Part shown: piece after piece, positions 5,065-38,074 of the stretch | Layout of the letters: each line of letters opens with the position of its first letter | How positions within the stretch are numbered: the stretch's first letter is position 1 | Virus record (IMG/VR): IMGVR_UViG_3300036944_001289 | Location: 124,001 to 188,000 of that record | Length of the DNA stretch: 64,000 nt | Strand: one strand, 5' to 3' | The notes under the pieces: model-generated | Database searches by the model: none | Told to the model about the DNA's origin: nothing | What the model saw: only the letters and a program-made list of their open reading frames with translations | Position numbers and translations under genes: made by a program

Positions 5065-6060
5065 CTAGCGTTTGAGACTTCTGTACGTCTCAAACGAGAC
5101 GTCTGCATTAAACCCGTCTTTAACACCTTTTATAATAACAGCTATCGCGTCGTGTGAATGTAGAGATTCAAGATGACTTAATACCACTTTAAAATCTAAA
5201 ATCTTATCGTTTGTATTGAGTGCTTTGTATAAAAGTCTTGCTGCGTCTTCAACAAACTTAGGGTTCGCACCGTTTAATTCAGCAAAAGCTTGTTCATCCT
5301 CACGTAATACCATTACTTGAGTTTCTGTCTTAAGTGCAGATAAACAGAGTTGCTGTAAATCTTCTAACCAAATAAGATCGTTACACATTACAGATACTCT
5401 CGCTGTAGATCTTTGTGAGTGTGGAATTGCAGCTCTATTCCTGTACTTTCTTGCATGTTCACTTAATTCATTAGAGCAAGGGCATGCACTACTATATACG
5501 AAATCGAAATGGATTACTTTTTTAATTTCATTATTGCGATTTACAGATATCTCAAACGTGACATCATAATATTGATATCCTGATAGCCCTGTTCTTAGTG
5601 ATTCTTGTAATATAGGATAGCTTATATGTAGCGCTATTTTAGCATCGAAAGAACCTATTTTATTTCTATATTCTTGTAATACTTTTTCGACGAGATTGAT
5701 ATTAAAATGTTCTTCTTTATACTCATAAAATGATCTAACTATGCGAGACATATTAATACCTCTTGACTCTGCATCGAGAGAGACTGTACCAGTAACAATA
5801 GTTTCGAGTTCTATGGGTGTGTAGTCTTTTCTGTCCCATTTGAGAGGTAATCTGAAACCGTGTATACCAACATGTTCTATGTGTTCACGTATACCTCCAT
5901 ATATATCATTTTGTAAATCTGGTAACGTTTGTTTATACTCTGCAGATGTTTTAAAATCTACATCATATTCCTTGATAGGTTCAATATATTGACTTGAATA
6001 TAGTGTTCCTATCAATTGTTCTGCTAATTTATTCTTGTCTTGTGTATTCATCGAGATCAT
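5065..6060 (-). CDS. folE2: GTP cyclohydrolase IB
   Basis: LPDLQ, RGINMSR, YSSACPCS, PHSQRS, REDEQAFAE, PKFVEDAAR, ESLHSHDA motifs. Confidence 0.95.
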   Translation of the reverse strand: MISMNTQDKNKLAEQLIGTLYSSQYIEPIKEYDVDFKTSAEYKQTLPDLQNDIYGGIREHIEHVGIHGFRLPLKWDRKDYTPIELETIVTGTVSLDAESRGINMSRIVRSFYEYKEEHFNINLVEKVLQEYRNKIGSFDAKIALHISYPILQESLRTGLSGYQYYDVTFEISVNRNNEIKKVIHFDFVYSSACPCSNELSEHARKYRNRAAIPHSQRSTARVSVMCNDLIWLEDLQQLCLSALKTETQVMVLREDEQAFAELNGANPKFVEDAARLLYKALNTNDKILDFKVVLSHLESLHSHDAIAVIIKGVKDGFNADVSFETYRSLKR

Positions 6061-6859
6061 TATAGTATATAATTGTTTTCTTAGAAATCCAAAAAACTCC
6101 TACTTTTTTTGATATTTTTAATGCGTGTGATATTTTTGCACAATCTCTGTCGAAAGATTCTTTTTTAGTTAGGGATTGTGGTTGAAAATATACACATTTT
6201 CCATCTGGGTCTAGATCTACCTGTTGTTTGGTAAAATGGTATGGTCCGTGATATTCCAATATTAGCTTAATACTACCATCTTCGTCTAGACAAACAAAAT
6301 CATAACTACAAAAACGCTTAATACCATTTATTTCTAAAACTTGATAATATTCTTTACCATTTATACCACCATTTTTAAAATAACACATTTTTTCATCAAT
6401 ACCATTTTCGTTGCAAAACTTTTTTATAAAAATAAATGCCGATTTAGAAAATCTACCGTTTATGTTTAAAGTGTTTATAGTACCGTAGCGCTCAAACATA
6501 GTTTTCCTGCGTTTAATAGATGTTTCAGATGTTATTCCTAATTTTATGTTTAATTTACGCTCTTCAGGGTTTTTATAAATACCACACTTTTGTTTTCTTA
6601 TTTCTAGTTGTTCTCTAGAAAGCATCTGTTTTTTAGCTTTTTCAGATCTTATTTTCTTCATTTTTTGGGCTAACTCAACACCATACCTCTCTTCATATGT
6701 AAGACCTTTAACTGTATTGACATACTTATCAATAGTTTCCTTATTTTTTAAGCAACTTACATTAAAACGTTGTTTATATTCCTCTGCTGTTAGATTATGT
6801 TGTTTGAGATGGGTGTTAGTTATTGCGTTAAATTCTTTATCACATATTAAACATATCAT
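6029..6859 (-). CDS. putative free-standing homing endonuclease (Zn-finger plus PD-(D/E)xK/Vsr-like domain)
   Basis: N-terminal CxxC...HLKQH...EEYK finger; C-terminal YDF...LEYHGPYH; overlaps folE2 start. Confidence 0.6.
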   Translation of the reverse strand: MICLICDKEFNAITNTHLKQHNLTAEEYKQRFNVSCLKNKETIDKYVNTVKGLTYEERYGVELAQKMKKIRSEKAKKQMLSREQLEIRKQKCGIYKNPEERKLNIKLGITSETSIKRRKTMFERYGTINTLNINGRFSKSAFIFIKKFCNENGIDEKMCYFKNGGINGKEYYQVLEINGIKRFCSYDFVCLDEDGSIKLILEYHGPYHFTKQQVDLDPDGKCVYFQPQSLTKKESFDRDCAKISHALKISKKVGVFWISKKTIIYYNDLDEYTRQE

Positions 6860-6938
6860 ATATTATTATTTAATGTTCACATCACCATTTAGACGTATAT
6901 AAATATGTGAAATAAACTGAAAATCAATAAATATTAAT

Positions 6939-7322
6939 ATGCGTATCAATAAAGTAATAGAGAATACTTTTAACACATTAAACTTAAAGAGAATCAGACT
7001 TAAAAGTGATCCTAACAATAACATAGTTCCTTATGAAGGTTATGTATTAGAAGAATGTGATGATGGCACTATGCAGATATATGCAATAGGTGCTGAAAAT
7101 CCTTATATGCAAGTAACACCTGATATGGTTGATGTACAGCAATCACTAACACCTTTAGATAAAATTAAGCTTATAATAGCTGGATGCATAGATAAAGGTG
7201 TTGCATGTCAAATTAAAGACTTAAATAATTTATCTGATATTGAAGCAACATTACTTTCAAGTGGATGTACAATGGAAGATATGTATAACATTTTCAAAAA
7301 ATACTTCTTAACAAATGAGTAA
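6939..7322 (+). CDS. late hypothetical protein
   Basis: 127 aa ORF with TAAATA 5 nt upstream. Confidence 0.6.
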   Translation: MRINKVIENTFNTLNLKRIRLKSDPNNNIVPYEGYVLEECDDGTMQIYAIGAENPYMQVTPDMVDVQQSLTPLDKIKLIIAGCIDKGVACQIKDLNNLSDIEATLLSSGCTMEDMYNIFKKYFLTNE

Positions 7323-8505
7323 ATTTTTACAAACAATAAATGAACAAGCTCCTACAGGTAAAATGCCAATTGGTAGTATACCTACAGGTAAAGGTATAAA
7401 GCCACAGCAACCTGTTCCACCTAAACCCACAACCCCACAAAACTATCAGAACAAAAGTTCATTAGGTCAAATAGGTGGCGCTTTAAGAAAAATTGGTTCT
7501 GGATTTCAAAAAGTAAAAGGAGCAGTCTCTGCTGTAAAAGACTTCACAGCTACAGGTGATCTTAGTGTATTACAACAACTTGGACAACAACTAATCAATA
7601 GAGCACTTGATTTAGATACATATAAAATATCTGCTTTTGGTAAAAAGGGATATACAGATGTTTTACTTATCGATGAAGAGTTGATAGCAAAAATTGGATT
7701 ACTAACACCGACAAAAAAAGTTAAAGCAGAGAGCGCAGACATTATTTTACAAAGCGGATTATTGAATGGTAATAAATTCTTACAAGTGTTAAAAGAAGCA
7801 AAACCAGCTGTAAAACAAAAACCGCAAGTTGCTATTGCTCCTCAATTTTTATTTGAACTAACAAAAGAAAGAAATCTAGGTACAAATGGTAAGCAATATA
7901 CGTTAACACCTAAGACACCTGAAGTGCAACAATATCTTAATGATAAAGGTATTAAGTTTGTAACATTTCTACGTGATCCAAATAACTCACCAGAAAATAT
8001 AGTAGGTAATGTCAGATTTGATGATAACTCAGGTAAGTTACAGTTTTATGATCTAGAAAATCAATTTATACAATCATTAGAAACAGAAGTAAAATTTGAA
8101 TATTCACCACAGGATAAACTATATAAAATAGGTTCATCTTTAACAGACCGCTCTTTTGAAGATATAGATCAAACTAAAGAATTACTAAAGAAAGGTATAT
8201 TGCTAATACATCCAAGAGAGAAATTATTTAGATTAGAAGGACCTACACAGGAAGGTAAATTTGCTAATTTTACTAATACACAGACGAAAGAACAATTTCA
8301 CGGTTTGCTAAACACATATCAGACTCCAGATAAAAAGACAAACTTTATTGTAATGTCTAGTATTAAACCTGGGCTAAAACCTTACACACAACCAACTGTA
8401 AGTAAACCAAGTACACCAAAAGTTGTAGCACCTAAGAAGGTTACTAAACCAGTGGCTGCTCCAGCCAAGCCAGCTACAACTGCACCAAATAAAACCACAC
8501 CTTAA
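7315..8505 (+). CDS. late hypothetical protein with P/K-rich ends
   Basis: 396 aa ORF; MSKFLQTINE leader. Confidence 0.65.
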   Translation: MSKFLQTINEQAPTGKMPIGSIPTGKGIKPQQPVPPKPTTPQNYQNKSSLGQIGGALRKIGSGFQKVKGAVSAVKDFTATGDLSVLQQLGQQLINRALDLDTYKISAFGKKGYTDVLLIDEELIAKIGLLTPTKKVKAESADIILQSGLLNGNKFLQVLKEAKPAVKQKPQVAIAPQFLFELTKERNLGTNGKQYTLTPKTPEVQQYLNDKGIKFVTFLRDPNNSPENIVGNVRFDDNSGKLQFYDLENQFIQSLETEVKFEYSPQDKLYKIGSSLTDRSFEDIDQTKELLKKGILLIHPREKLFRLEGPTQEGKFANFTNTQTKEQFHGLLNTYQTPDKKTNFIVMSSIKPGLKPYTQPTVSKPSTPKVVAPKKVTKPVAAPAKPATTAPNKTTP

Positions 8506-8836: not shown

Positions 8837-9469
8837 ATGATATATCAATCGAGTAAAATAATACCGTTAGGTTCTTGTGCATTTAGACAGCCATTTGCAG
8901 AGTCACATTGTAAATTCTTACACGGTTATAGATTACAAGCAAAGATTTGGGTTGCTTGTGATAAATTAGATAATAAAAACTGGGTCTTTGATTTTGGTGG
9001 TTTTAAAAGTATTAAAACTATTCTAGAAGATCAATTTGATCACACTACTGTTGTCGCTGAGAATGATCCTCATATCAATACGTTTAAAGAATTACATGCA
9101 AAGGGTATAATTGATCTAAGAGTCATGTCTGGTGTAGGTATCGAGAAGTTTGCAGAGTATGTACTTGAAGTGGCTAACACATACATAAAGAATTCAACAA
9201 ATGGTCGCTGTTGGGTGTCTCAAGTTGAAGTATGGGAGCATGAGCAAAACTCTGCAATGGCAATTAACTTCTGTAAAGAAGATATTAAACAAGCAGTTAA
9301 TAATATAGTTGCTAACGAAAACAAAACAGAGGTAAAGATTGAAGAGCCTGTTAAACCAGTAGAAAATATAACCCAACAAACAACCAATCAAACCGCAAAT
9401 CCATTATATGCTAAAAAGAGTACTGGGTGGTCTGATCCATTTAAAGGCACTTCTTGGGGTAATAAATAA
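8837..9469 (+). CDS. queD: 6-carboxytetrahydropterin synthase with C-terminal extension
   Basis: SHCKFLHGY, WVFDFG, FDHT, E-K-F-A, VEVWEHEQNSA motifs. Confidence 0.9.
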   Translation: MIYQSSKIIPLGSCAFRQPFAESHCKFLHGYRLQAKIWVACDKLDNKNWVFDFGGFKSIKTILEDQFDHTTVVAENDPHINTFKELHAKGIIDLRVMSGVGIEKFAEYVLEVANTYIKNSTNGRCWVSQVEVWEHEQNSAMAINFCKEDIKQAVNNIVANENKTEVKIEEPVKPVENITQQTTNQTANPLYAKKSTGWSDPFKGTSWGNK

Positions 9470-10559: not shown

Positions 10560-11330
10560 ATGAATGATATACTTTCAATATCCGACGATAAAGCATTCTA
10601 TACGCTTGAAGGAGAAGGTCGCTTTGTAGGTCAACCATCAGTTTTCTTGAGGTTGGCAATGTGTAATTTAACGTGTAAAGGGTTTGCATCTGAAGACTCA
10701 CCACACGGTTGTGATTCTTATATCTCTTGGTCAATTAAGAATCGTTTCTCATACGAAGATCTAAACAAATACTTTAGTGATAATGGTTTTGTAGAAAAGT
10801 TAAAAGAAGGTGCAATCTTAAAGTTAACTGGTGGAGAACCATTTCTACAACAGAAAAGACTATATGAATGGGTTGTACAATTCAAGAAGACATTTGGATT
10901 TAGAGAGACCTATCTTGGTGATGAACCTATTCTAAAGATAGACTTTGAAACAAACGGTACTATTTTACCGGATGATAAATGGTCAAGCGTTTTAAACGCT
11001 ACATTTACTACATCACCTAAAATGTCAAATAACGGTGATGAAGAGAAACTAAGATACAAACCAGAAGTACTAAAGTATCTCATTTCAAAAAATGCATGCT
11101 TTAAGTTTGTAATTAACAACCAATCTGATCTAGATGAACTGTATACAAAGTATATCCTCTCTACGGATGTTCTACTACCTAAAGATCTTATCTGGTTAAT
11201 GCCTTGTTGTGGTTCTCGTAAAGAACATGAGTTAAAAGCACCAATGGTTGCAGAGTTATGTAAGGAACATGGATTTAATTTCAGTCCAAGATTGCATTTA
11301 ATTCTTTGGAACCAAGCTTTACGTGTATAA
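10560..11330 (+). CDS. queE: 7-carboxy-7-deazaguanine synthase (radical SAM)
   Basis: YTLEGEG, VFLRL, CNLTC-x11-CDS, TGGEP, ETNGT, SPK, FKFV, PRLH motifs. Confidence 0.9.
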   Translation: MNDILSISDDKAFYTLEGEGRFVGQPSVFLRLAMCNLTCKGFASEDSPHGCDSYISWSIKNRFSYEDLNKYFSDNGFVEKLKEGAILKLTGGEPFLQQKRLYEWVVQFKKTFGFRETYLGDEPILKIDFETNGTILPDDKWSSVLNATFTTSPKMSNNGDEEKLRYKPEVLKYLISKNACFKFVINNQSDLDELYTKYILSTDVLLPKDLIWLMPCCGSRKEHELKAPMVAELCKEHGFNFSPRLHLILWNQALRV

Positions 11331-13244: not shown

Positions 13245-13276
13245 AAATCCACGAATTTTTAATTCGTGGATTTTTT
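13245..13276 (+). terminator. intrinsic terminator
   Basis: AAATCCACGAATT-ttt-AATTCGTGGATTT plus T-run. Confidence 0.75.
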
Positions 13277-13301
13277 ATGTCTAAAGCATATAATATCAAT
13301 T

Positions 13302-14093
13302 ATGCGTATCGCGATTTCAGGGACGGCTTCACAAGGGAAGAGTACTCTTATTAAAGACTTTCTAACAGAATGGCCTTTATTTAAATCTGAAAGCTCTACT
13401 TATAGAGACTTAATAAAAACTGCAAATTTACCTCATAGTAAAAATGCTACCAAAGACAGCCAGTGGAAGATATTGAACTTTATGTTGGATGAGCTCCAAA
13501 AATATACACTTACTGATAACGTCATATTCGACAGATGTCCGCTAGATAATCTAGTATACTCACTATGGTGCTTTGAAAATAACGTAGGTGATATTGATAA
13601 GGAATTTATCGATAAGTGCATACCTATTGTAAGAGAAAGTTTAAGACATCTAGATATTATCTTTTTTATACCCATTACTAGGGTATCACCTGTTAAGATT
13701 GAAAATGACGGATTGAGAGAATCCGATGGTGTTTATATTAAAGAGATTGACAATATTTTCAAAGCTCTTAATATGCAATATAGATTGGGTTTAGGTAAAA
13801 CACCGTTCTTTCCTACAGATGACTGCCCTGCGGTTATAGAAATATTTGGTAATCGTCAAGAACGTATTCAAATGATCAAGCTATACTTAAATCAGAACGG
13901 TGAATGTATAGGTGGAGACGTTAATGATCCCAATAATATACTAAACCCTAATAATATACTAAACCCTAATAATTTGTTAGTAGATCAAATAGGCTCAATT
14001 CTTAGTGACCAAAAAGCTATCGATAAGAAAGAAAAAGCCTATAAGAAAGAAATTAAACAAATTAAGGAATTTGTAAAGAAAAATAAACGTTAA
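13302..14093 (+). CDS. P-loop nucleotide kinase/ATPase (AAA_28-like), copy 1
   Basis: MRIAISGTASQGKST, DRCPLDN, DIIFF, DGLRE; start re-called at 13302; PNNILN repeat near 13930. Confidence 0.8.
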   Translation: MRIAISGTASQGKSTLIKDFLTEWPLFKSESSTYRDLIKTANLPHSKNATKDSQWKILNFMLDELQKYTLTDNVIFDRCPLDNLVYSLWCFENNVGDIDKEFIDKCIPIVRESLRHLDIIFFIPITRVSPVKIENDGLRESDGVYIKEIDNIFKALNMQYRLGLGKTPFFPTDDCPAVIEIFGNRQERIQMIKLYLNQNGECIGGDVNDPNNILNPNNILNPNNLLVDQIGSILSDQKAIDKKEKAYKKEIKQIKEFVKKNKR

Positions 14094-14434
14094 TTGGTAG
14101 CACTAAGCATTATTGCGTAGTTTGCACCATTTATTCTTATTTTTATATAGTGTGTAGAACTTGTTAAAACAGCAGAAGTCGTAGTTTGCCCGTAAAAAGT
14201 TGAAGATAACGACGATATATTCAACGTATTAGTAGTAACAGCCGAGGACAACGACAATATATCTGATGAGTTGCTACTAATAGTAGACGCAAACGTGACA
14301 TTATCTAAACCTACTATAAAATCTTTAAAATCTAGACGTCTGGTCTCAATACCATTATCTACTATCAGATAATCTCCATTAATAATTTCATTTGTTACAG
14401 GTAACTGATTGATACCTATGTTTACGGTTGACAT
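14090..14434 (-). CDS. small fibre/appendage-like structural protein
   Basis: Start re-called; INQLP...DYLIVD N-module, S/T-rich body, YIKIRING.NYAI C-terminus. Confidence 0.55.
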   Translation of the reverse strand: MSTVNIGINQLPVTNEIINGDYLIVDNGIETRRLDFKDFIVGLDNVTFASTISSNSSDILSLSSAVTTNTLNISSLSSTFYGQTTTSAVLTSSTHYIKIRINGANYAIMLSATN

Positions 14435-14460
14435 ATATAAAATATTTAATATAATACTAT

Positions 14461-15243
14461 ATGAATAAAATAGGTGTAGCTGTAATAACTTGTAATAGAC
14501 GAGCATTATTCAGTGTTTGTTTAGATTCTCTAAAGAAATGTTCATACGATGAATTGATCGTAATCAACGATGGCGCACCTATTAACGATAATTTTGATTG
14601 CGAGATAATAAACAACGAAAAAAACTTAGGTGTTGGTTTATCTAAAAATAAAGCAATGTCAATTCTTTTATCAAGAAACTGTGATTTTCTATTTATCATT
14701 GAAGATGATATGATTATAAAAGATAAAGATATACTTCAAAAATATATACACGCACATAATGTTACCGGTTTACATCACTTTATGTTTGCATATCATGGTT
14801 ATGCAAATAAAGATTATAATACCAAATCTGCTAAACCTAGAGTTATCATAGATTATGATAACGTAAAGGTATCACTAAATAGACATTGTGTTGGTGCTTT
14901 CTGTTTTTATACCAAATCTTCATTACAGGATGTCGGGTTAAACGACGATAAGTTCTATAATGCTTTCGAACATGTAGATCACTCTTTTAGATTAGCTAAG
15001 AAAGGTTATAGTACACCTTATTGGTGGTGGGCTGATATAGCAAATAGCTTAGATTTAATTGATGAGCAGTGTGCACCTGATGTTAACTCATCTATAAGAC
15101 ATAAACCAGACTGGGAAAAAACAATGAATAACTCTATGAAGTATTTTATGGAGAAACACAAAACCTCACCTCTACATGTACCAGACGCAAGTACAGAGGA
15201 AGTAGTAAATTTTCTTAAAAAAATTAAAGTAAAAAATGCATAA
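14461..15243 (+). CDS. GT2-family glycosyltransferase
   Basis: AVITCNR, VINDG, NLGVG..KN, IIEDD, GLND.KF..AFEHVD. Confidence 0.9.
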   Translation: MNKIGVAVITCNRRALFSVCLDSLKKCSYDELIVINDGAPINDNFDCEIINNEKNLGVGLSKNKAMSILLSRNCDFLFIIEDDMIIKDKDILQKYIHAHNVTGLHHFMFAYHGYANKDYNTKSAKPRVIIDYDNVKVSLNRHCVGAFCFYTKSSLQDVGLNDDKFYNAFEHVDHSFRLAKKGYSTPYWWWADIANSLDLIDEQCAPDVNSSIRHKPDWEKTMNNSMKYFMEKHKTSPLHVPDASTEEVVNFLKKIKVKNA

Positions 15244-15982
15244 AGACTTTACGTTAATAACGTGTTCTTATAATACACCTATAATAACTACAACCTTGTT
15301 AAAGTCATGGGCGTTTTACCATGATACACAAACGAAAATTGTACTAGTAGATAACTCTACTGACGAATTAACACATAAAATACTAATTGAAAATAACATA
15401 CCAGTGACTCGTGTTTTTGGTGATACACATGGTAATGGTGTGAATCGAGCTATAGAATTGTGTAAAACAAAATATGCTTTACTTGTGGATACAGATGTAA
15501 TATTTCTAAAACATCACGAAAAACTACTCAATGATTTTATACAATCAAAGCTAACATTAATGGGTAGATTAGAGGGTGATAGAGGTGGTAAAAATATACA
15601 TGATAGAATAGCACCATGTCATTGTTTTATAGATATTGAAAATATTAAAAAACATAATATTACATTCTTTAATATGCAAAAAATGAGAGATAGCTTTAAC
15701 ACAAATAAAATTTACGACATAGGTTCTACTTTTTTTGAAGATATTAAAAATGTGAAACTCGGTATAGGTCATATAGATGTAGAGAATAATTACTACATTC
15801 ATCTTGAAGGTATGAGTTGGTATAAAAATAAATACGATCCTTCTAAAGAGGATACAGGCATAGATTTTGGAGGTACACACAATAATCGTGCGTATGTAGA
15901 TATAGCAAATCAGAAAGAACTAATGTATCAACCATATGTTAAAAAGTTCGAAAACGTCAATATAGGAAACAAGTATATATGA
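15236..15982 (+). CDS. GT2-like glycosyltransferase
   Basis: SYNT, LVDNS, HG.GVN, LVDTD (DxD). Confidence 0.85.
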   Translation: MHKDFTLITCSYNTPIITTTLLKSWAFYHDTQTKIVLVDNSTDELTHKILIENNIPVTRVFGDTHGNGVNRAIELCKTKYALLVDTDVIFLKHHEKLLNDFIQSKLTLMGRLEGDRGGKNIHDRIAPCHCFIDIENIKKHNITFFNMQKMRDSFNTNKIYDIGSTFFEDIKNVKLGIGHIDVENNYYIHLEGMSWYKNKYDPSKEDTGIDFGGTHNNRAYVDIANQKELMYQPYVKKFENVNIGNKYI

Positions 15983-16731
15983 AAAATAAAATTTTATTCT
16001 TAATCGTTGTGCATAATAAAAGTATAATAGATTTATTTGAGTCCACTAAAAAGTACCACAAGTTAGCAAATTACAAGTATTTATTAGTAGGTAATCACAA
16101 TACTGATTACTCTAACGACATCATTATACAATGTAATAAACTTCAGAACAATATCGAACACAATGCTAATTATCTAGCATATACAGGTTGGTATGCAGCT
16201 GCACATAATAAAGAAATAACAAATTGTTATGATTATGTATGTCTCTTAGAGTATGATACAGATATCAACGAAAACTTCTCTCTCACAGAATTTTGTAACG
16301 AAGTTGTAACAAAAAATAAAAAATGCTACGGTATAACATTTATAGATAATATTAAAGAGTTGTTTATACGTAATCACTTTTCTGATAAGCTAATTGATTT
16401 TTTAATAAAGAATAAAATCACAGAAATAAAACCAACACAGAATAGATGGATAACAACTAATAACGTCGTCTTCAGTACAGATTTTTTACATGCATATTTT
16501 AATCACGATATGACGAAGGAAATACTAGTATATTTTAATAACGATAAAATGTCTGGACACTTCTTAGAAAGATACCTCAGTGTATTTTGTTTCTTGCAAT
16601 CGGTTGATTTTGACATTATTGAATGCAATAATATGCAACATAGAGGTTACGACAGCCATCGTACACAGAATATTTTTTCATCACATAGGGGCTATGAACA
16701 ATTTAAAATTACTAATAAAATTTCCGACTAG
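15979..16731 (+). CDS. GT-A fold glycosyltransferase-like protein
   Basis: CLLEYD, HFLER motifs; array context. Confidence 0.6.
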   Translation: MKNKILFLIVVHNKSIIDLFESTKKYHKLANYKYLLVGNHNTDYSNDIIIQCNKLQNNIEHNANYLAYTGWYAAAHNKEITNCYDYVCLLEYDTDINENFSLTEFCNEVVTKNKKCYGITFIDNIKELFIRNHFSDKLIDFLIKNKITEIKPTQNRWITTNNVVFSTDFLHAYFNHDMTKEILVYFNNDKMSGHFLERYLSVFCFLQSVDFDIIECNNMQHRGYDSHRTQNIFSSHRGYEQFKITNKISD

Positions 16732-17365
16732 ATCTAGACCGGAAAAATTCTTCAACACACTTAACAAGTACTACAGTCTGCTAACTACAGACTCTGTAGA
16801 GTTTGTAGTTTCCTGTGATAATGATGATTATTCAATGAATAATCCTGACGTTATAAGTAAAATGAAGACATATAAGAACCTGTCATTTTTCTTTGATAAT
16901 AATAAATCAAAAGTTGAAGCTTGTAATGCAAACATATCAGGTAAAGAATTCGATATTATTTTACTTGCTTCAGATGATATGGTACCTGAGATAAAAGGTT
17001 ATGACGAAATAATAAAGAAAGTGATGTTTAAGTACTTTCCAGATATGGATGGAGTACTGTGGTTTAATGATGGGTTTCAACAGATGAATCTAAACACACT
17101 ATCCATTTTAGGTAAAAAATATTACGATAGATTTGGATACATATACAACCCTGCATATAAGTCACTATATTGTGATAAAGAGTTTACAGTAGTATCACGT
17201 AGTTTAAAGAAAGTAATCTATATACAGGATTGTATTATTAGACATAAACAATATTCTATTACTAAAGAGAAGCCTGACGAACTTTACATCAAAAACGATA
17301 GACTCGAATCTGACGACTCAAAAACATTTAATATTAGAGCGTTAAACAATTTTCAAAATGGATAA
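16694..17365 (+). CDS. GT-A fold glycosyltransferase
   Basis: Start re-called at 16694; PTRSRP, DNDD, SKVEACN, ASDDM, LYCD. Confidence 0.75.
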   Translation: MNNLKLLIKFPTRSRPEKFFNTLNKYYSLLTTDSVEFVVSCDNDDYSMNNPDVISKMKTYKNLSFFFDNNKSKVEACNANISGKEFDIILLASDDMVPEIKGYDEIIKKVMFKYFPDMDGVLWFNDGFQQMNLNTLSILGKKYYDRFGYIYNPAYKSLYCDKEFTVVSRSLKKVIYIQDCIIRHKQYSITKEKPDELYIKNDRLESDDSKTFNIRALNNFQNG

Positions 17366-18074
17366 AATATTAGTATCATTTGCAACAAACAATAAATGGT
17401 ATGCTTCACAAGCATTACTAAATAAAACCGCAGCAAAAGGTGGTTTCACAGGTTATATATCTTATACAGATAGAAACTGGAGCTTTAAACACGATTACGA
17501 TGACATCTCCAGTACCAGAGGTTATGGTTATTGGATGTGGAAACCTTTAATTATTTTAGATGTAATGTCTAAACTCAATAATGGTGATATAGTAGGATAT
17601 ATCGATAGTGGTAATAGTATAGTGAATAGTTTAGAGTATATATTCAATCACTGCGCATCTAACGAGATTACCTTATTCGACAATCGCGACGGTAATTTCA
17701 ATAACACCACACATAAAAACAAGACATGGACTAAGCGTGACTGTTTTGTACTAATGAATTGCGACAATGATAGATACTACGAAGCCTCTCAAGTTGATGC
17801 ATCATATCAATTTTATAAAAAGACTGATAAGACTATAGCTTTCCTAGAAGAATATAAAGATTATTGCTGCAATAAAAATATAATATCTGATCTACCTAAC
17901 ATAACCGAAAAAAATCTACAAGACTTTAAGGATCATCGACACGATCAATCAATATTATCATTGTTAGCAGTTAAACATAATATAGAACTACTACCTGAAC
18001 CATCAGAGTGGGGAAATTATTTAAAAGATAGACCATACGTTCAGCTGTTTAGACATCATAGAGGTGTAATCTAA
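17358..18074 (+). CDS. GT-A fold glycosyltransferase
   Basis: RGYGYWMWKP, YIDSG, HRHDQSILS. Confidence 0.75.
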   Translation: MDKILVSFATNNKWYASQALLNKTAAKGGFTGYISYTDRNWSFKHDYDDISSTRGYGYWMWKPLIILDVMSKLNNGDIVGYIDSGNSIVNSLEYIFNHCASNEITLFDNRDGNFNNTTHKNKTWTKRDCFVLMNCDNDRYYEASQVDASYQFYKKTDKTIAFLEEYKDYCCNKNIISDLPNITEKNLQDFKDHRHDQSILSLLAVKHNIELLPEPSEWGNYLKDRPYVQLFRHHRGVI

Positions 18075-18084
18075 CTACTATAAT

Positions 18085-18849
18085 ATGGAAGTAAATATTA
18101 ATTTTTTCTTAATTACCTATAATATGCTACTGGATAAAGCGGTTCAACACCTCACTCCAGAAGAGCTTGATAAGTTAACTTGTTATACTGTACAGAAAAA
18201 GGTTCCAAAACAAATAACTACCAAGGTAGCTAAGAGAATTAATGAATGGGAATTACCATGGAATGACTATTTTTATCAAAGAAGTCAATGCTATGAATAT
18301 GGTGCTATGGTACATTTATATACAAACAAAGAGTTGATAGAAAAACTAACACATGTTGGTATCATGCATTATGATGTTATTTTTAATACAAACTCTGTGC
18401 AAAGCGTTATTTCAGAACTAACAAAAAATCCAGATACAATTTTCTACCAAATGATAAGACCAAAAGAGCAACTCTCTCTATCAAAGTATGAAGTATCTAA
18501 GCTTTGCGAATTTATGAGTGAAAAAATGGAAACAGAAGTCGATGGATCCATTGCCTGGGATAACGGATGGATAAGTGAAGCTCTAAGCCTAACACCTAAG
18601 TATGTTTTCGAAAAATACGCAAAATTTTTATATGAACACCATCTAGAAATTCTCGATATATTAAAAAACAATAGATGGAATATCATGAACCATTGCCCGC
18701 ACCGGATGTGCGGTATCTTAGAAAGAATGTGGGGATTTTATTTAGTATCTAGAAATTTACCCTTAAAACAATTAGATATTAAACATGATTGGGATTCTTA
18801 CCAACATAAACATATGGAGAGTAATGGTACAGGTGCAAAAATTTTATGA
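18085..18849 (+). CDS. glycosyltransferase-like protein
   Basis: HYDV and CGILERMW motifs similar to the 15979 ORF; array context. Confidence 0.5.
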   Translation: MEVNINFFLITYNMLLDKAVQHLTPEELDKLTCYTVQKKVPKQITTKVAKRINEWELPWNDYFYQRSQCYEYGAMVHLYTNKELIEKLTHVGIMHYDVIFNTNSVQSVISELTKNPDTIFYQMIRPKEQLSLSKYEVSKLCEFMSEKMETEVDGSIAWDNGWISEALSLTPKYVFEKYAKFLYEHHLEILDILKNNRWNIMNHCPHRMCGILERMWGFYLVSRNLPLKQLDIKHDWDSYQHKHMESNGTGAKIL

Positions 18850-19511
18850 TAACAAAACTAACAGAATTAGCAAATAAACACGGTACAGATAAAGGTACCA
18901 CATTTAATATAAGACACGGTTATACTGAAGTATATCCTAAATATATACCTGAAAAGGTAAATAAAATTTTAGAGATAGGTGTAAGGTTTGGCTCAAGTAT
19001 AAGGATGTGGTCAGATTACTATCCAGAAGCATCGACTATTTACGGATTAGACTATTGTGTTGAAATTTCTGTAGATCAACTAAAGCAAATTCAATCTGAA
19101 AATCCTAAGTATAAGTTTTTCCACGCAGATCAATCTAATCGAATACATCTCAAAGAAGTTGCAGATACGATTGGTGATAATCAACTTGATTTTATTTTAG
19201 ATGACGGTAGTCACTGCGTTGACCATCAGCAAATATCTCTAGCTGGATTATTTAGAACCGTTAAATCAGGTGGGCTGTATATGATAGAAGATTTAGCAGA
19301 TATGTATTACCCGCAAGGTGGTTGGAATATAAAAGACTTAAAAAACTTTACAGACGTAACACTTAATGTTTTAGATAAATTTAGTAAGACAGGTAAATTT
19401 GAATCACCTTACTTAACAGCAGAAGAAAATACTTATCTCGAAAATGCTATTGATAAAATTGTATTAGAAATTAAGTTGGAAAACAATATAGCGTTTATTT
19501 ATAAACGTTAA
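18846..19511 (+). CDS. class I SAM methyltransferase (sugar O-methyltransferase-like)
   Basis: GTDKG, HGY, LEIGV, GLD, ILDDGSH, GGLYMIED. Confidence 0.85.
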   Translation: MITKLTELANKHGTDKGTTFNIRHGYTEVYPKYIPEKVNKILEIGVRFGSSIRMWSDYYPEASTIYGLDYCVEISVDQLKQIQSENPKYKFFHADQSNRIHLKEVADTIGDNQLDFILDDGSHCVDHQQISLAGLFRTVKSGGLYMIEDLADMYYPQGGWNIKDLKNFTDVTLNVLDKFSKTGKFESPYLTAEENTYLENAIDKIVLEIKLENNIAFIYKR

Positions 19512-19528
19512 TAATTCTTTAAACAATA

Positions 19529-20311: not shown

Positions 20312-20334
20312 TCTCGATTACATCTATATTATTA

Positions 20335-21472: not shown

Positions 21473-22006
21473 ATGAAAACATTAAAAACAAGAAACGATT
21501 TACTAAATTTAGTACCGAAAAACGCTACTATAGCAGAGATTGGTGTATTTAGAGGTGAGTTTGCAAAGTATATAATTCAAGTAACACAACCTGAACATTT
21601 ATACCTAGTCGATATATGGCAAGGTAGTTGGGGATCAGGTGATAAAGACGGTAATAACTATGTTAAAATAGAAAACATGGAAGAGATTTATCTACAGCTA
21701 TTTCACCAAGTAAAAAACAAACCAAATATTCATATAGTAAGATCATCCTCACATAACTTCTTAAAGAGTTGCTCTGAAAATTATTTTGATGCTGTATATG
21801 TTGATGGTGATCATACAGAGGAAGCAGTGTATCAAGATATGGTAGATTCGTTTAGAGTAGTGAAAGCAGGAGGTCTGCTAATGGGTCATGACTATCACCA
21901 TCAAATTAAAATAGCAGTTGATAGATTCTGTATCAATTTTAATCAAAAAATAAAAATAGTTACAGATGATGGATGTCCTTCTTTCCTAATTGAGATTATA
22001 AAATAA
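21473..22006 (+). CDS. class I SAM methyltransferase (Methyltransf_24-like)
   Basis: AEIGVFRG, LVDIW, VYVDGDH, GGLLMGHDY. Confidence 0.85.
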   Translation: MKTLKTRNDLLNLVPKNATIAEIGVFRGEFAKYIIQVTQPEHLYLVDIWQGSWGSGDKDGNNYVKIENMEEIYLQLFHQVKNKPNIHIVRSSSHNFLKSCSENYFDAVYVDGDHTEEAVYQDMVDSFRVVKAGGLLMGHDYHHQIKIAVDRFCINFNQKIKIVTDDGCPSFLIEIIK

Positions 22007-22007
22007 T

Positions 22008-23812: not shown

Positions 23813-23832
23813 AACTGATATTATTATAACGA

Positions 23833-24420
23833 ATGATCATTAAAAATCTCAAAAAATACGATGGTTCTTTGATTCATAAGAGATTTGCTTATGAATACTT
23901 TAGAAAGAAAACATTACCTATCGGTAATATAGTAGCATTTCGTGGTGAAATGGATGTAACTACTAATCTTATCGATAGCGAAGATCTACTTAATAACGAC
24001 TATATTCATAGTGAAGATGCAATAAACTTCTGTTGGGAGATTCCTAATCTCGACGCATTTGGTGCAGTAGCCTTTCAAAGACTATTCAATACATATATTG
24101 CAAACATTCTATCATCAAAGTATCTCAAAAAGCCCATTGAAGTAGATGGTGATGACTTAATGGTGCATGATGAGTTTGAAGGTTCAGATGGTTCATTGCA
24201 AAAGGTTGGTAAGTGTAGTGTTAGCATTACATATTCTAAAGATGGTATTGCATTAGGGCATACTGGTATCAATATCGATGCTGGTAGAAAAGCTCCTAAC
24301 TTTGCATATAGTACTAAGCTTACTGATGAACAAGCTGAACAGTTTATGAAAGACGTTATCGACGTATTTTACGCTACGACAGACGATATTTTCATTGCCA
24401 CGACGAAAGTTATCGTGTAA
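23833..24420 (+). CDS. DUF366-like protein (biotin/lipoate-ligase fold)
   Basis: YDGS, IVAFRG.MDV, FCWEIP, AVAFQRL, DGDDL, K.SVSI, HTGINI pattern recalled for DUF366. Confidence 0.7.
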   Translation: MIIKNLKKYDGSLIHKRFAYEYFRKKTLPIGNIVAFRGEMDVTTNLIDSEDLLNNDYIHSEDAINFCWEIPNLDAFGAVAFQRLFNTYIANILSSKYLKKPIEVDGDDLMVHDEFEGSDGSLQKVGKCSVSITYSKDGIALGHTGINIDAGRKAPNFAYSTKLTDEQAEQFMKDVIDVFYATTDDIFIATTKVIV

Positions 24421-35781: not shown

Positions 35782-36585
35782 ATGAATCATAAGATTTTAA
35801 TTTCACATGAATCACCTATATCAATACTGACCGACTCCCTTCAGTTTAACGATTATGATTACTGTCTAGTACATCTTTTAGAACAGAAACCTGAATATGC
35901 TGAGTTTTTTAAAAGGAGTAAAGCACTCAATCGTGAAATCCTACTAGATAATAGTATATTTGAATTAGGTACATCGTTCGAACCTTCTAAATTTGCTAAG
36001 TATGTAGAATCACTACAACCTAATTGGTATATAGTACCAGATGTTTTAGAAGATGGTTATGCTACGATAGAATCGTTCAATAAGTTTACGTCTACATACA
36101 AAGATCTACCTGGATTAAAAATAGGTGCAGTACAAGGTAAATGTTATGATGAATTAGTTGACTGTTATAAGTATATGTCGCAAAATGCTGACTATATTGC
36201 TATAAGTTTTGATTTTAGCTACTATATCGGTACAGGTATTGGTTTATCAAAATTAGATAGATGGTGTGATGGTAGAAAGCGATTTATTAAATCTTTGATA
36301 AATGATGGTGTATGGGATTGGAATAAACCACACCATTTACTAGGTTGTTCTTTAGCAAAAGAGTTTAGCTATTACGTGAATAATAACATCTATAATATTA
36401 GATCGATTGATACATCAAACCCTGTTGTAGCTGGTATCAAAGGCATGAGATATAATGGAGATTTAGGGTTAAATGATAAACCTTCGATTAAACTTGCTGA
36501 CTTAATTGACCACGAAGTAACAACTGATGAATTGGAAATTATTAATTATAATACACGTCAATTTAAAAACATATTAAAAAGATGA
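35782..36585 (+). CDS. TGT-fold DpdA-like deazaguanine DNA transglycosylase
   Basis: Start at 35782; LDNSIFE, VPDV, AVQG, HHLLGC, SIDTSNP match TGT catalytic-barrel motifs; no Zn-binding CxCxxC; operon with queF. Confidence 0.7.
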   Translation: MNHKILISHESPISILTDSLQFNDYDYCLVHLLEQKPEYAEFFKRSKALNREILLDNSIFELGTSFEPSKFAKYVESLQPNWYIVPDVLEDGYATIESFNKFTSTYKDLPGLKIGAVQGKCYDELVDCYKYMSQNADYIAISFDFSYYIGTGIGLSKLDRWCDGRKRFIKSLINDGVWDWNKPHHLLGCSLAKEFSYYVNNNIYNIRSIDTSNPVVAGIKGMRYNGDLGLNDKPSIKLADLIDHEVTTDELEIINYNTRQFKNILKR

Positions 36586-37151
36586 TAATAACATTTACAG
36601 GTACACAATCAGTAGGTAAAAGTACTTTGCTTTCAGCTCTTCAAAAAGATGAAAGATATAAAGACTGGATGTTTGAACCGGAAATAACGCGTAGTCTAAA
36701 AGAGAAGTTTGGACTGAATATAAATGAATCAGGTGATTCAATAACGCAGTTATTCGTTCTAAATTCGCATTTAGAAAATGTAGTAAAACATAAGAACAAT
36801 AATGTTATTTTAGATAGATGTATAGTTGATGGGCTTGTATATACAACATATCAGTATATGACAGGTAAGATTCATACAGATGTATTTTTGCATGCAAAGT
36901 ATATGTTCGATCTTATTATAGATAAATATGATATAATATTTCATATTGAGCCTGAATTTCCTGTTGTTGATGATGGTGTAAGAAGTATAGATGAAAAGTT
37001 TAGAACAACTATAGCTTCATTGATAAACGAAGCCTTACAATCTAATAGTGTAGTTAGAACTAAGATAGTAAAGTTAACAGGTACTGTAGAAGAAAGATTG
37101 AAACAAATAGATATAGCTATTGAAAACTTAAAAGCACAAAATATAATATAA
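36582..37151 (+). CDS. P-loop nucleotide kinase/ATPase (AAA_28-like), copy 2
   Basis: FTGTQSVGKST, DRCIVDG, YDIIF, DDGVR. Confidence 0.8.
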   Translation: MIITFTGTQSVGKSTLLSALQKDERYKDWMFEPEITRSLKEKFGLNINESGDSITQLFVLNSHLENVVKHKNNNVILDRCIVDGLVYTTYQYMTGKIHTDVFLHAKYMFDLIIDKYDIIFHIEPEFPVVDDGVRSIDEKFRTTIASLINEALQSNSVVRTKIVKLTGTVEERLKQIDIAIENLKAQNII

Positions 37152-37153
37152 AC

Positions 37154-38074
37154 ATGGCACTTAAAAAACTCGACAATAAAAACATAAGCAAGCACCTTGG
37201 TAAGGTATCACAATACAAATCAACATATGATGCTTCTCTCTTGGTAAGAGAGCCAAGATCATCTAATAGAGTACATCTTAATATTAAAGATGATAACTTA
37301 CCCTTTGTAGGTTATGATACTTGGAATGCATATGAAGTTAGTGCATTAACAGATAGTGGTTTACCTGTTGCAGGTGTAGCTAAAATTGTTTACCCTGCTT
37401 CAAGCAAATATATCGTAGAATCAAAGTCTATTAAACTTTACTTTAATTCTTTTAATATGACTAAACTAGGGTTTCATAGCGATGCAGTTCTTGATAAAAT
37501 AGCAATTACTGCTTCAGAAGATCTCTCAAAACTACTCGAAACAGATGTACAAGTTTACGTACATTCGAATGCTGAAGTACTACGTCAACAAAGCACTGCA
37601 TATACCGAATGGAATCACAAAAAATACTCAACAATAGAGGATGAGTATAATGTTAATGATGTAACCTTTGAAATCTATAAGGAAACACCAGAACTACTAC
37701 AAGTAGTAGATAGTGTTAACGATACAGTTCACTATCATAGTGCTCTACTTAAGAGTAATTGTAGAGTAACATCACAACCAGACTGGGGTGATGTATATAT
37801 AACCATCACAAAAAAAGATAAAACTATTGACCCTATCTCTTTACTAAAGTATATAATATCATTTAGAGATGAGTGCCACTTTCATGAAGAGATATGTGAG
37901 ACAATTTATAAACGCATATATGATAAGCTAACACCTGATGAACTTACGGTAAGATGTTTGTATGCACGTAGGGGTGGTATTGATATAAACCCTGAGCGTG
38001 CAAATAAAGAGGTATTATTAAGTACTAATCTACAACTTAATTGTATACCACATATTAAAACACCTAAGCAATAA
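37154..38074 (+). CDS. queF: NADPH-dependent preQ0 reductase (bimodular QueF)
   Basis: WNAYEVS, IVESKSIKLYFNSF, LKSNCRVTSQPDWG (catalytic Cys), FHEEICE, YARRGGIDINP. Confidence 0.95.
   Translation: MALKKLDNKNISKHLGKVSQYKSTYDASLLVREPRSSNRVHLNIKDDNLPFVGYDTWNAYEVSALTDSGLPVAGVAKIVYPASSKYIVESKSIKLYFNSFNMTKLGFHSDAVLDKIAITASEDLSKLLETDVQVYVHSNAEVLRQQSTAYTEWNHKKYSTIEDEYNVNDVTFEIYKETPELLQVVDSVNDTVHYHSALLKSNCRVTSQPDWGDVYITITKKDKTIDPISLLKYIISFRDECHFHEEICETIYKRIYDKLTPDELTVRCLYARRGGIDINPERANKEVLLSTNLQLNCIPHIKTPKQ

What the first reader, a model, noticed from the sequence alone, without database searches (positions are those of the whole stretch)
5065..38074. Dispersed 7-deazaguanine DNA-modification pathway that includes a true QueF reductase
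Seen: folE2 (5065), queD (8837), queE (10560), TGT-fold DpdA-like (35782) and bimodular queF with catalytic Cys (37154); queC is not in this window. Known: FolE-QueD-QueE-QueC make preQ0, QueF reduces it to preQ1, and phage DpdA proteins place deazaguanines in DNA to block restriction. Use of FolE2 rather than FolE is notable. Inference: the DNA carries dPreQ1, whose free primary amine is a handle for further chemistry by neighbouring enzymes, possibly giving an undescribed base.
Basis: partly seen in the sequence, partly recalled or inferred. Interest (0 to 1): 0.75.

Follow-up and report, generated by a model that had tools for sequence, protein, structure and literature searches.

The report
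Phage preQ1-type DNA guanine replacement genes
An uncultured 209-kb T4-like phage carries a full gene set to make the guanine analogue preQ1 and put it into its own DNA through a DpdA3 enzyme; this kind of system is known, but this phage lacks the usual formylating enzyme and has an acetyltransferase instead, so its DNA base may be one not yet described.

Summary
They are FolE2, a QueD-like protein, a QueE-like protein, a TGT-fold protein and a bimodular QueF with its catalytic Cys and NADPH motif. QueC lies 13 kb upstream of the window.

The TGT-fold protein is a DpdA3. It is 48.5% identical to the DpdA3 of Flavobacterium phage immuto, whose G is fully replaced by formyl-dPreQ1. Its model matches TGT and DpdA structures at Z 18. 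It forms a tight cassette, DpdA3-kinase-QueF, between baseplate and capsid genes.

Phage QueF and dPreQ1 DNA are already published (Hutinet 2019; Cui 2023), so the core finding is a new member of a known kind.

What differs from immuto:
- DpdN (formyltransferase) and DpdM (methyltransferase) are absent from the complete genome.
- The genes next to the cassette look structural, not enzymatic.
- A GNAT acetyltransferase sits 2.5 kb from QueC, outside the window.

Among relatives, GNAT and DpdN exclude each other: 4 records against 15, with no exception. The tree allows as few as one evolutionary event behind this pattern.

My estimates for the final base are plain dPreQ1 about 0.45 and N-acetyl-dPreQ1, an undescribed base, about 0.3.

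The kinase is kept beside DpdA3 in at least three phage lineages. This raises the possibility that the base is exchanged on nucleotides before replication.

The parts
5065..6060 (-). FolE2 (GTP cyclohydrolase IB), first step GTP to H2NTP
   Evidence: PF02649 230.8 bits; NF010200 268.8 bits, above the 215 cut-off. The metagenome gene call is 328 aa.
8837..9469 (+). QueD-like 6-carboxytetrahydropterin synthase, with motif CxxxHGY and a 60-aa low-complexity tail
   Evidence: PF01242 54.8 bits; PHROG 2389 E 3e-37; 39% identical to immuto QueD, which has the same CxxxHGY motif.
10560..11330 (+). QueE-like radical-SAM 7-carboxy-7-deazaguanine synthase, with Cys motif C35-x3-C39-x11-C51
   Evidence: PHROG 2076 E 3e-44; five NCBIfam QueE models match below their cut-offs.
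35782..36585 (+). DpdA3, a minimal TGT-fold 7-deazaguanine transglycosylase (267 aa; the ORF is open from 35722)
   Evidence: 48.5% identical to immuto DpdA3 and about 45% to CP220 DpdA3. AF2 pLDDT 93. Z 18 to TGT, ArcTGT and DpdA 7ui4. 2716 homologues, mostly 260-270 aa.
36582..37151 (+). P-loop NMP-kinase-like protein (AAA_28; 'thymidylate kinase' PHROG). Its start overlaps the DpdA3 stop (ATGA).
   Evidence: PF13521 63 bits and PHROG 2107 E 7e-29. 37% identical to the kinase beside CP220 DpdA3 and 33% to the immuto one. Present in all but five of the 80 related DpdA3 loci.
37154..38074 (+). Bimodular QueF, NADPH-dependent preQ0 to preQ1 reductase
   Evidence: PF14819 plus PF14489; TIGR03138 249.7 bits (cut-off 293); Cys203, ESKSIKLY, QPDWG and FHE conserved against 3bp1.
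38102..39740 (+). Three accessory ORFs (195, 267 and 84 aa) downstream of QueF. They are not part of the pathway.
   Evidence: Fibre-like and ConA/laminin-G-like by Atlas. Absent or replaced in relatives L006, L023, L050 and L051.
13266..14093 (+). Second AAA_28 kinase paralogue near QueE; its link to the pathway is unknown
   Evidence: PF13521 33.6 bits; PHROG 2107 E 2e-14.

Best explanation
The window holds most of a DpdA3-type phage system that replaces guanine in the phage's own DNA with a preQ1-derived 7-deazaguanine.

The proposed pathway is:
- FolE2, QueD and QueE, with QueC (13 kb outside the window), turn GTP into preQ0.
- QueF reduces the nitrile of free preQ0 to the aminomethyl group of preQ1.
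- DpdA3, a stripped-down TGT-fold transglycosylase, swaps guanine for this base. It works together with the kinase that is always encoded beside it.

By analogy with the three DpdA3 phages that have been analysed, replacement is probably complete or nearly so. It should protect the DNA from host nucleases.

The genome lacks the formyltransferase DpdN and the methyltransferase DpdM. The final base is therefore not fdPreQ1 or mdPreQ1. It is either plain dPreQ1 (most likely) or dPreQ1 capped by another enzyme.

Shown here: gene identities, conserved catalytic motifs, the fold, synteny, and the absence of DpdN and DpdM.

Inferred: enzyme activities, the DNA (rather than tRNA) target, the extent of replacement, and the final base.
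For: - Gene identities.
- DpdA3: 48.5% identical to the DpdA3 of immuto (fdPreQ1, no dG detected) and about 45% to that of CP220 (PMC10516641 read).
- Fold: TGT superfamily at Z 18.
- Cassette order: DpdA3-kinase-QueF matches immuto's DpdA3-DpdN-kinase-QueF minus DpdN.
- Same minimal cassette, in the same slot between baseplate spike and capsid gene, in 39 of 80 related IMG/VR loci and in large contigs.
- DpdN and DpdM are absent from the complete 209-kb genome.
- Phage QueF proteins with these motifs complement an E. coli queF mutant (PMC10516641).
Against: - No chemistry was done: no isolate exists. The nearest cultured phage has 34% capsid-protein identity.
- DpdA3 activity has never been reconstituted by anyone.
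- QueD, QueE and QueF score below the NCBIfam equivalog cut-offs.
- QueC has lost 3 of its 4 zinc-binding Cys. Immuto's QueC has none and that phage still makes a preQ1 derivative.
- A GNAT near QueC may modify the amine further.
Confidence: 0.75

Rival explanations
1. The final base is N-acetyl-dPreQ1 (7-(acetylamino)methyl-7-deazaguanine), an undescribed base. A 157-aa GNAT acetyltransferase (G000 107502-107975(-), outside the window, 2.5 kb from QueC) would take over the amine-capping role that the formyltransferase DpdN has in sister phages. It would use acetyl-CoA in place of formyl-tetrahydrofolate.
For: - The GNAT passes the Pfam gathering scores (PF13508 28.3 against 27; PF00583 23.0 against 20.7). 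Its AF2 model (pLDDT 93) matches amine N-acetyltransferases such as SpeG and the Nat enzymes.
- It overlaps its neighbours' stop and start codons in the operon o127-GNAT-GT2_5-DnaB.
- All 61 IMG/VR relatives of this GNAT sit in the same slot of the conserved order PolB-UvsX-QueC-o127-GNAT-GT-DnaB, wherever the contig reaches far enough.
- No homologue turned up in cultured phages.
- The distribution is complementary. All 4 records with GNAT that also hold the DpdA3 cassette lack DpdN. All 15 DpdN-type records that hold QueC lack GNAT (with a positive control).
- In 10 of 12 such records with this synteny, o127 lies directly against GT. In one there is about 100 bp of unaligned sequence, and in G019 a 292-aa ORF on the opposite strand lies between them.
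- G044 has the own-type QueC (65% identity, same one-Cys motif) yet carries DpdN and no GNAT. This suggests a second, independent swap.
Against: - The association may rest on a single evolutionary event. GNAT-bearing phages form one clade apart from G044, whose position is weakly supported, and the AU test does not reject a single origin (p 0.226).
- GNATs have many substrates, and the fold hits are generic.
- No DpdN-less record without GNAT could be checked, because the contigs are too short.
- The small protein that accompanies DpdN in most sister cassettes has no counterpart here.
Confidence: 0.3
2. The base is exchanged on nucleotides before replication, not in finished DNA. DpdA3 would exchange guanine for preQ1 on dGMP (or another deoxynucleotide). 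The adjacent kinase would phosphorylate the product. The phage polymerase would then incorporate the triphosphate. This would explain full replacement. It is a rival only for the insertion step.
For: - A homologous P-loop kinase lies directly beside DpdA3 in Campylobacter phage CP220 (37% identity), in immuto (33%) and in all but five of the 80 aquatic loci.
- In phiST a 159-aa P-loop protein precedes DpdA3 and a MazG-like pyrophosphatase lies nearby.
- CP220 has an HD-phosphohydrolase/P-loop gene just upstream of its DpdA3.
- Some sister cassettes carry a dATP/dGTP-pyrophosphohydrolase-like gene (PF18909; PHROG 801 E 4e-21) or a GMP-reductase-like gene between DpdA3 and the kinase.
- DpdA3 is only 267 aa and has no CxCxxC zinc motif.
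- ADG nucleoside was reported in CP220-infected cells (cited in PMC10516641).
Against: - Cui et al. 2023 argue that all 7-deazaguanine DNA marks are post-replicative because a DpdA is always present.
- All characterised DpdAs act on DNA.
- This genome shows no dGTP-depleting enzyme in the roughly 190 kb with Pfam annotation.
- The kinase substrate is unknown.
Confidence: 0.4
3. The pathway serves RNA, not DNA. The phage would boost preQ1 and queuosine supply for host tRNA, and the TGT-like protein would modify tRNA.
For: The Que genes and the TGT fold are those of tRNA queuosine synthesis.
Against: - The protein belongs to DpdA3, which is linked to fully modified DNA in three analysed phage groups.
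- It lacks the C-terminal zinc motif of tRNA-guanine transglycosylases.
- No QueA, QueG or QueH genes were seen in the annotated genome.
- The cassette is conserved beside a nucleotide kinase.
Confidence: 0.04
4. The modification is sparse (a few percent of G or less), as in DpdA1, DpdA2 or phiSM-type phages, not a wholesale replacement.
For: - Phages with QueF and DpdA1 or DpdA2 carry dPreQ1 at 0.1-1% of G.
- This genome lacks an evident dGTPase.
Against: All three DpdA3 phage groups analysed so far show no residual dG. The protein is a clear DpdA3.
Confidence: 0.15

Closest known systems
[quoted passage not shown] 2023)
   Same: - DpdA3 is 48.5% identical, QueF 47.6%, kinase 33% and QueD 39%.
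- The gene order DpdA3-...-kinase-QueF is shared.
- QueD has the same CxxxHGY motif.
- QueC lacks the zinc motif in both.
   Different: - There is no DpdN here.
- FolE2 replaces FolE1.
- The pathway genes are scattered over about 50 kb instead of about 7 kb.
- The virion module is unrelated (T4-like).
- A GNAT lies near QueC.
Sister clade of uncultured aquatic T4-like phages with DpdA3-DpdN-(GuaC)-small ORF-kinase-(rSAM)-QueF (at least 574 IMG/VR loci)
   Same: Both have the same insertion slot between baseplate spike and gp23 capsid gene, the same replication-module synteny around QueC, and DpdA3 55-62% identical.
   Different: - The sister clade carries DpdN, usually with a 116-aa unknown protein or an MazZ-like dATP/dGTP pyrophosphohydrolase.
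- It lacks the GNAT.
- Most members keep the QueC zinc motif and use FolE1.
Campylobacter phage CP220 group (DpdA3, dADG replaces all G)
   Same: DpdA3 is about 45% identical. A homologous kinase (37%) lies immediately downstream. The capsid is T4-like.
   Different: The CP220 group has no QueC or QueF, and its end product is the amide dADG. An HD/P-loop gene lies upstream of its DpdA3.
[quoted passage not shown]
   Same: These phages encode QueF and carry dPreQ1 in DNA. Their QueF acts on the free base.
   Different: They use DpdA4, DpdA1 or DpdA2, reach 0.01-30% replacement, and some add DpdM (mdPreQ1).
Bacterial TGT / DpdA (PDB 1pud family, 7ui4)
   Same: They share the (beta/alpha)8 TGT fold, Z 18 over about 231 residues.
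   Different: Sequence identity is 11-14%. There is no Pfam TGT match, the protein is about 100 residues shorter, and it has no zinc-binding Cys cluster.

Membership tests
DpdA3 (phage 7-deazaguanine transglycosylase subfamily) | Sequence kinship with the DpdA3 proteins of immuto, CP220 and phiST | tested here: met
   48.5%, about 45% and 25% identity; E 4e-67, 2e-51 and 2e-4. PHROG 19058 E 2e-57.
DpdA3 (phage 7-deazaguanine transglycosylase subfamily) | TGT-superfamily fold despite no ordinary Pfam TGT hit | tested here: met
   No PF01702 match. AF2 pLDDT 93. Foldseek E 3e-8 and VIA Z 18 to TGT, ArcTGT and DpdA.
DpdA3 (phage 7-deazaguanine transglycosylase subfamily) | Co-encoded 7-deazaguanine synthesis genes | tested here: met
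   FolE2, QueD, QueE, QueC and QueF are in the same genome.
DpdA3 (phage 7-deazaguanine transglycosylase subfamily) | Complete replacement of dG in virion DNA; base-exchange activity | not testable with these tools
   There is no isolate and no nucleoside data. The activity has not been reconstituted in the literature either.
QueF, bimodular type (NADPH-dependent preQ0 reductase) | QueF_N plus QueF domains, catalytic Cys, and NADPH motif E(S/L)K(S/A)hK(L/Y)(Y/F/W) | tested here: met
   PF14819 108 bits and PF14489 82 bits. Cys203 in LLKSNC, ESKSIKLY at 89-96, and the Asp of QPDWG and His of FHE aligned to 3bp1.
QueF, bimodular type (NADPH-dependent preQ0 reductase) | NCBIfam equivalog cut-off (TIGR03138) | tested here: not met
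   249.7 bits against a cut-off of 293.45. It is a divergent phage member; similar phage QueFs complement E. coli.
FolE2 (GTP cyclohydrolase IB) | Equivalog model above the curated cut-off | tested here: met
   NF010200 268.8 bits against 215; PF02649 full length.
QueD (6-carboxytetrahydropterin synthase) | PTPS fold family and the CxxxHGH signature | tested here: inconclusive
   PF01242 is above its cut-off, but TIGR03367 scores 42 bits against 89. The motif is CKFLHGY (second His replaced by Tyr), as in immuto QueD.
QueE (7-carboxy-7-deazaguanine synthase) | Radical-SAM core with three cluster Cys; equivalog score | tested here: inconclusive
   All five QueE NCBIfam models match below their cut-offs. 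PHROG QueE-like E 3e-44. The Cys spacing is C-x3-C-x11-C, not CxxxCxxC.
QueC (7-cyano-7-deazaguanine synthase) | PP-loop SGGxDS and the C-terminal four-Cys zinc site | tested here: inconclusive
   PF06508 175 bits and SGGADS are present. Only 1 of 4 zinc Cys is kept. Immuto's QueC has none, yet that phage makes a preQ1 derivative.
fdPreQ1 system (needs DpdN, PF00551 formyltransferase) | DpdN encoded in the genome | tested here: not met
   No PF00551 match in the complete genome. No tblastn hit with seven DpdN queries.
mdPreQ1 system (needs DpdM, DUF3109) | DpdM encoded in the genome | tested here: not met
   No PF11307 match in the complete genome.
GNAT N-acetyltransferase (candidate preQ1-amine capping enzyme, outside the window) | GNAT fold and an acetyl-CoA motif of R/Q-x-x-G-x-G/A type | tested here: met
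   PF13508 and PF00583 are above the gathering scores. The motif is K/R-G-Q-G-I-A. The model hits GNAT structures at E 6e-8.
GNAT N-acetyltransferase (candidate preQ1-amine capping enzyme, outside the window) | Acts on preQ1 or dPreQ1 | not testable with these tools
   The only evidence is positional and phyletic.

The most novel reading that the evidence does not exclude
In this phage and its clade, guanine is wholly replaced by N-acetyl-dPreQ1, a DNA base not yet described. A dedicated GNAT beside QueC would have displaced the formyltransferase DpdN of sister phages. The base may enter DNA through a nucleotide-level route run by DpdA3 and its partner kinase, rather than by post-replicative exchange.
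Probability: 0.25. Interest if true: 0.8.

Novelty: new variant of a known kind. Interest (0 to 1): 0.55.

Why it matters
- DpdA3 systems are the only 7-deazaguanine systems known to replace every G, and only three phage groups have been analysed.
- The DpdA3 family is very large in metagenomes: 2716 protein clusters, at least 559 IMG/VR loci with DpdA3 and at least 574 with DpdN.
- In this sample it splits into a DpdN (formyl) type and a DpdN-less type, and the window belongs to the second.
- If the DpdN-less type carries fully substituted dPreQ1, its DNA would bear a positive charge on every G. That would be a new extreme for natural DNA. If instead it carries acetyl-dPreQ1, that would be a ninth natural 7-deazaguanine.
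- The conserved DpdA3-kinase pair gives a direct test of the published claim that all such marks are added after replication.
- Practically, such DNA resists restriction enzymes and may bias sequencing and metagenome recovery.

Tried and rejected
1. Cassette neighbours as tailoring enzymes: rejected.
- o195 and o267 look like fibre or lectin-type structural proteins. With o84 they are not conserved in relatives.
- o360 and the 761-aa spike are baseplate genes on the other strand.

2. ORF396 between FolE2 and QueD as an enzyme: no support.
- It has no Pfam, PHROG or Atlas relatives, and its ends are proline/lysine-rich and disordered.

3. The 254-aa insert between DpdA3 and the kinase in one relative (L049) as a new tailoring enzyme: rejected.
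- It is homing-endonuclease-like (NUMOD3).

4. The PF00551 hit in GNAT-bearing record G006 as a hidden DpdN: rejected.
- It lies 23 kb from the cassette and has no similarity to DpdN queries.

5. A strict 'zinc-sparing' package of FolE2, Cys-less QueC and GNAT: rejected as a rule.
- G009 has GNAT but FolE1.

6. Several independent GNAT/DpdN swaps: not shown.
- The tree needs 2 changes, the well-supported branches force only 1, and the AU test gives p 0.226.

7. Homology between the two small-ORF families that precede the kinase in sister cassettes: not detected (hhalign probability 0.2).

8. preQ1 riboswitch or tRNA genes in the window: none.

9. Near-identical cultured phage: none.

Full report
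**What the sequence is**

The window is bases 124001-188000 of a 209,282-bp virus record. The record has short terminal repeats, is estimated complete, and has 33% G+C. It has a T4-type capsid gene (gp23 family, window 39886-41340(-)), a T4-type portal, prohead protease and baseplate genes. No cultured phage is close: the best capsid identity is 34%, to cyanomyoviruses, and there is no DNA match. The same DNA occurs in shale-gas metagenome runs. Weaker matches occur in lake and freshwater runs.

**Check of the observation**

- FolE2 (5065-6060(-)) passes the NCBIfam equivalog cut-off (268.8 bits against 215).
- The QueD-like gene (8837-9469) and the QueE-like gene (10560-11330) match the phage QueD-like and QueE-like PHROGs strongly (E 3e-37 and 3e-44). 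Both fall below the NCBIfam equivalog cut-offs.
- QueF (37154-38074) has both QueF domains. Aligned to V. cholerae QueF it keeps the catalytic Cys (Cys203, LLKSNC), the NADPH motif ESKSIKLY, and the Asp and His of the active site.
- QueC is not in the window. It is in the genome at G000 110536-111288(-), in the replication module (PolB, UvsX, QueC, then DnaB and gp32).

**The TGT-like protein is a DpdA3**

It has no Pfam TGT hit and no sequence hit in the PDB. By tblastn it is 48.5% identical to the annotated DNA guanine transglycosylase of Flavobacterium phage immuto. It is about 45% identical to the homologue in the Campylobacter phage CP220 group and 25% to that of Cellulophaga phage phiST. 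These are the three DpdA3 phage groups of Cui et al. 2023. In all three, dG is completely replaced, by fdPreQ1, dADG and dDG respectively.

An AlphaFold model built on 30 homologues (pLDDT 93) matches bacterial TGT, archaeal ArcTGT and the bacterial DNA preQ0 insertase DpdA. VIA-align gives Z 18 over about 231 residues, and Foldseek gives E 3e-8.

Homologues are mostly 260-270 aa. The protein has no CxCxxC zinc motif. Invariant residues include LDNSIFE, PDVLED, QG, HHLLG and DTSNP. Their order resembles the Asp/Asp/Gln-Gly/Gly/Asp active-site series of TGT. That mapping is my inference and was not verified residue by residue.

**The cassette**

DpdA3, a P-loop kinase (36582-37151; AAA_28, 'thymidylate kinase' PHROG) and QueF are packed together. 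DpdA3 and the kinase share an ATGA overlap, and only 2 nt separate the kinase from QueF. They lie on the + strand, between baseplate genes and the capsid gene, which are on the - strand. Immuto has DpdA3, a small ORF, DpdN, kinase and QueF in that order. The window has the same order without DpdN.

The three ORFs after QueF (195, 267 and 84 aa) look like fibre or ConA-like structural proteins. They are absent from close relatives.

**Relatives**

DpdA3 has 2716 homologous protein clusters at E 1e-5 or better and at least 559 IMG/VR loci. I sorted 80 of these loci by gene order.
- 39 have the minimal cassette DpdA3-kinase-QueF, like the window.
- 36 have DpdA3-DpdN followed by some of: a GMP-reductase-like gene, a small protein of about 116 aa, the kinase, sometimes a radical-SAM/SPASM gene, and QueF.

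The small protein is either an unknown family or a dATP/dGTP-pyrophosphohydrolase-like protein (PF18909; PHROG 801).

DpdN-type loci number at least 574 in IMG/VR. On a DpdA3 tree the DpdN label needs at least 4 changes. Rooted on CP220 (a long branch), DpdN-less lineages are basal.

**What the final base is**

DpdN (PF00551) and DpdM (PF11307) are absent from the complete genome. The published tailoring steps are therefore excluded. Plain dPreQ1 is the default prediction, probably at or near full replacement, because the inserting enzyme is a DpdA3.

I annotated about 190 kb of the genome through precomputed Pfam hits on the source contig. The only acyltransferase found is a 157-aa GNAT at G000 107502-107975(-). 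It lies 2.5 kb from QueC and overlaps the stop and start codons of its neighbours o127 and a GT2_5 glycosyltransferase. Its model is a typical amine N-acetyltransferase fold.

Evidence that links the GNAT to the pathway:
- All 61 IMG/VR relatives of this GNAT (down to 37% identity) sit in the same slot of the conserved order PolB-UvsX-QueC-o127-GNAT-GT-DnaB, wherever the contig reaches far enough.
- Four records hold both the GNAT and the DpdA3 cassette (G000, G006, G009, G012). All have the DpdN-less cassette.
- Fifteen DpdN-type records hold QueC. All lack the GNAT, and the profile found its positive controls.
- In 10 of the 12 of these records that show this synteny, o127 lies directly against the glycosyltransferase. 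In one there is about 100 bp of unaligned sequence. In G019 an opposite-strand 292-aa ORF lies between them.
- G044 has a QueC of the window's type (65% identity, same one-Cys motif) but carries DpdN and no GNAT.

Limits of this evidence:
- On a UvsX+QueC+DnaB tree the GNAT label needs two changes, but only one is forced by well-supported branches.
- An AU test does not reject a single origin (p 0.226). The complementarity may therefore reflect one event.
- No paper in the searched library mentions an acetyltransferase together with dPreQ1.

I rate N-acetyl-dPreQ1 at about 0.3 and plain dPreQ1 at about 0.45.

**How the base gets in**

Cui et al. propose post-replicative exchange for all DpdAs. 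Several observations fit a nucleotide-pool route better.
- A homologous kinase sits next to DpdA3 in CP220 (37% identity), in immuto (33%) and in nearly all aquatic loci.
- phiST has a P-loop protein directly before its DpdA3 and a MazG-like pyrophosphatase nearby.
- CP220 has an HD/P-loop gene upstream of its DpdA3.
- Some sister cassettes carry a dATP/dGTP pyrophosphohydrolase-like gene.
- DpdA3 is a minimal barrel of 267 aa.

Under that route, base exchange would occur on dGMP, followed by dedicated phosphorylation and polymerase incorporation. This would also explain 100% replacement.

Against it, this genome shows no obvious dGTP-removing enzyme, and no DpdA is known to act on nucleotides. 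I give this rival for the insertion step about 0.4.

**Variant features of the synthesis genes**

- QueC has lost three of the four zinc-binding Cys (TWTCYSNREDKLADADTPSSS against B. subtilis TLTCYNGIIADGCGECPAC).
- Most DpdN-type relatives keep CGECTAC. GNAT-clade relatives have one or two Cys.
- Immuto's QueC has none, yet that phage makes a preQ1 derivative. The loss is therefore compatible with function.
- QueD has CxxxHGY in place of CxxxHGH, as in immuto.
- QueE has C-x3-C-x11-C.
- FolE2 is found in three GNAT-clade records (G000, G006, G008). FolE1 is found in G009 and in all five DpdN-type records tested. It is a non-orthologous displacement within the lineage, not a defining feature.

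**Verdict**

The suggested role of neighbouring enzymes is not supported inside the window.

The system is a DpdN-less variant of the DpdA3 type. It belongs to a large uncultured clade. It has a specific, testable candidate (the GNAT) for a new base. It also offers a testable alternative for how DpdA3 systems insert their base.

Noticed in passing
G000 107502-107975(-), about 16 kb upstream of the window start (locus L030:7502-7975): A GNAT acetyltransferase lies between o127 and a GT2_5 glycosyltransferase, 2.5 kb from QueC. It is present only in DpdN-less relatives and absent from all 15 DpdN-type records that hold QueC.
   Followed up: yes
G000 110536-111288(-) (L001:1408-2160): QueC has lost 3 of its 4 zinc-binding cysteines. 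Across relatives the motif goes from 4 Cys to 2 to 1, and immuto's QueC has none.
   Followed up: partly
window 13900-24420: A run of about 12 same-strand genes includes GT2, GT47 (exostosin-like) and GT1 glycosyltransferases. Sugar-nucleotide genes (an NTP transferase and epimerase/dehydratases) lie at G000 97-102 kb. The target of this glycan machinery is unknown.
   Followed up: no
window 13266-14093(+): This is a second AAA_28 'thymidylate kinase'-like paralogue, about 27% identical to the immuto cassette kinase. It lies near QueE.
   Followed up: partly
window 7315-8505(+): A 396-aa orphan ORF lies between FolE2 and QueD. It has no Pfam, PHROG or Atlas relatives, and its ends are Pro/Lys/Thr-rich and disordered.
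   Followed up: partly
window 4453-4647(+) and 6029-6859(-): A 64-aa Hc1 histone-like protein, and a 276-aa protein with a ROS/MucR zinc-finger N-terminus, flank FolE2.
   Followed up: no
window 43172-43621(-): A TnsA-like endonuclease N-terminal domain ORF sits inside the head module, between the prohead protease and gp13-like genes. It is conserved in relatives L050 and L051.
   Followed up: no
L007:10596-11921, L009:9418-10389, L010:9831-10205 (sister-clade cassettes): DpdN-type cassettes carry extra genes: a radical-SAM/SPASM protein, a GMP-reductase/IMPDH-like protein, and either an MazZ-like dATP/dGTP pyrophosphohydrolase or an unrelated 116-aa protein just before the kinase.
   Followed up: partly
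L294:4484-4963 (Cellulophaga phage phiST CGPG_00066): The hypothetical protein directly upstream of phiST DpdA3 has a P-loop (GEICSGKD). Together with the MazG-like gene nearby, this repeats the DpdA3 plus kinase plus pyrophosphatase pattern.
   Followed up: no
G000 about 8-23 kb (L275): An NAD-salvage and nucleotide block holds NadV/NAMPT, a PRPP-synthase-like gene, a nucleoside 2-deoxyribosyltransferase-like gene and a GMP-reductase/IMPDH-like gene.
   Followed up: no
window 914-1339(+): A SegE-type GIY-YIG homing endonuclease is present. Homing-endonuclease-like inserts also interrupt the cassette in relative L049 and the o127/GT junction in G019.
   Followed up: no
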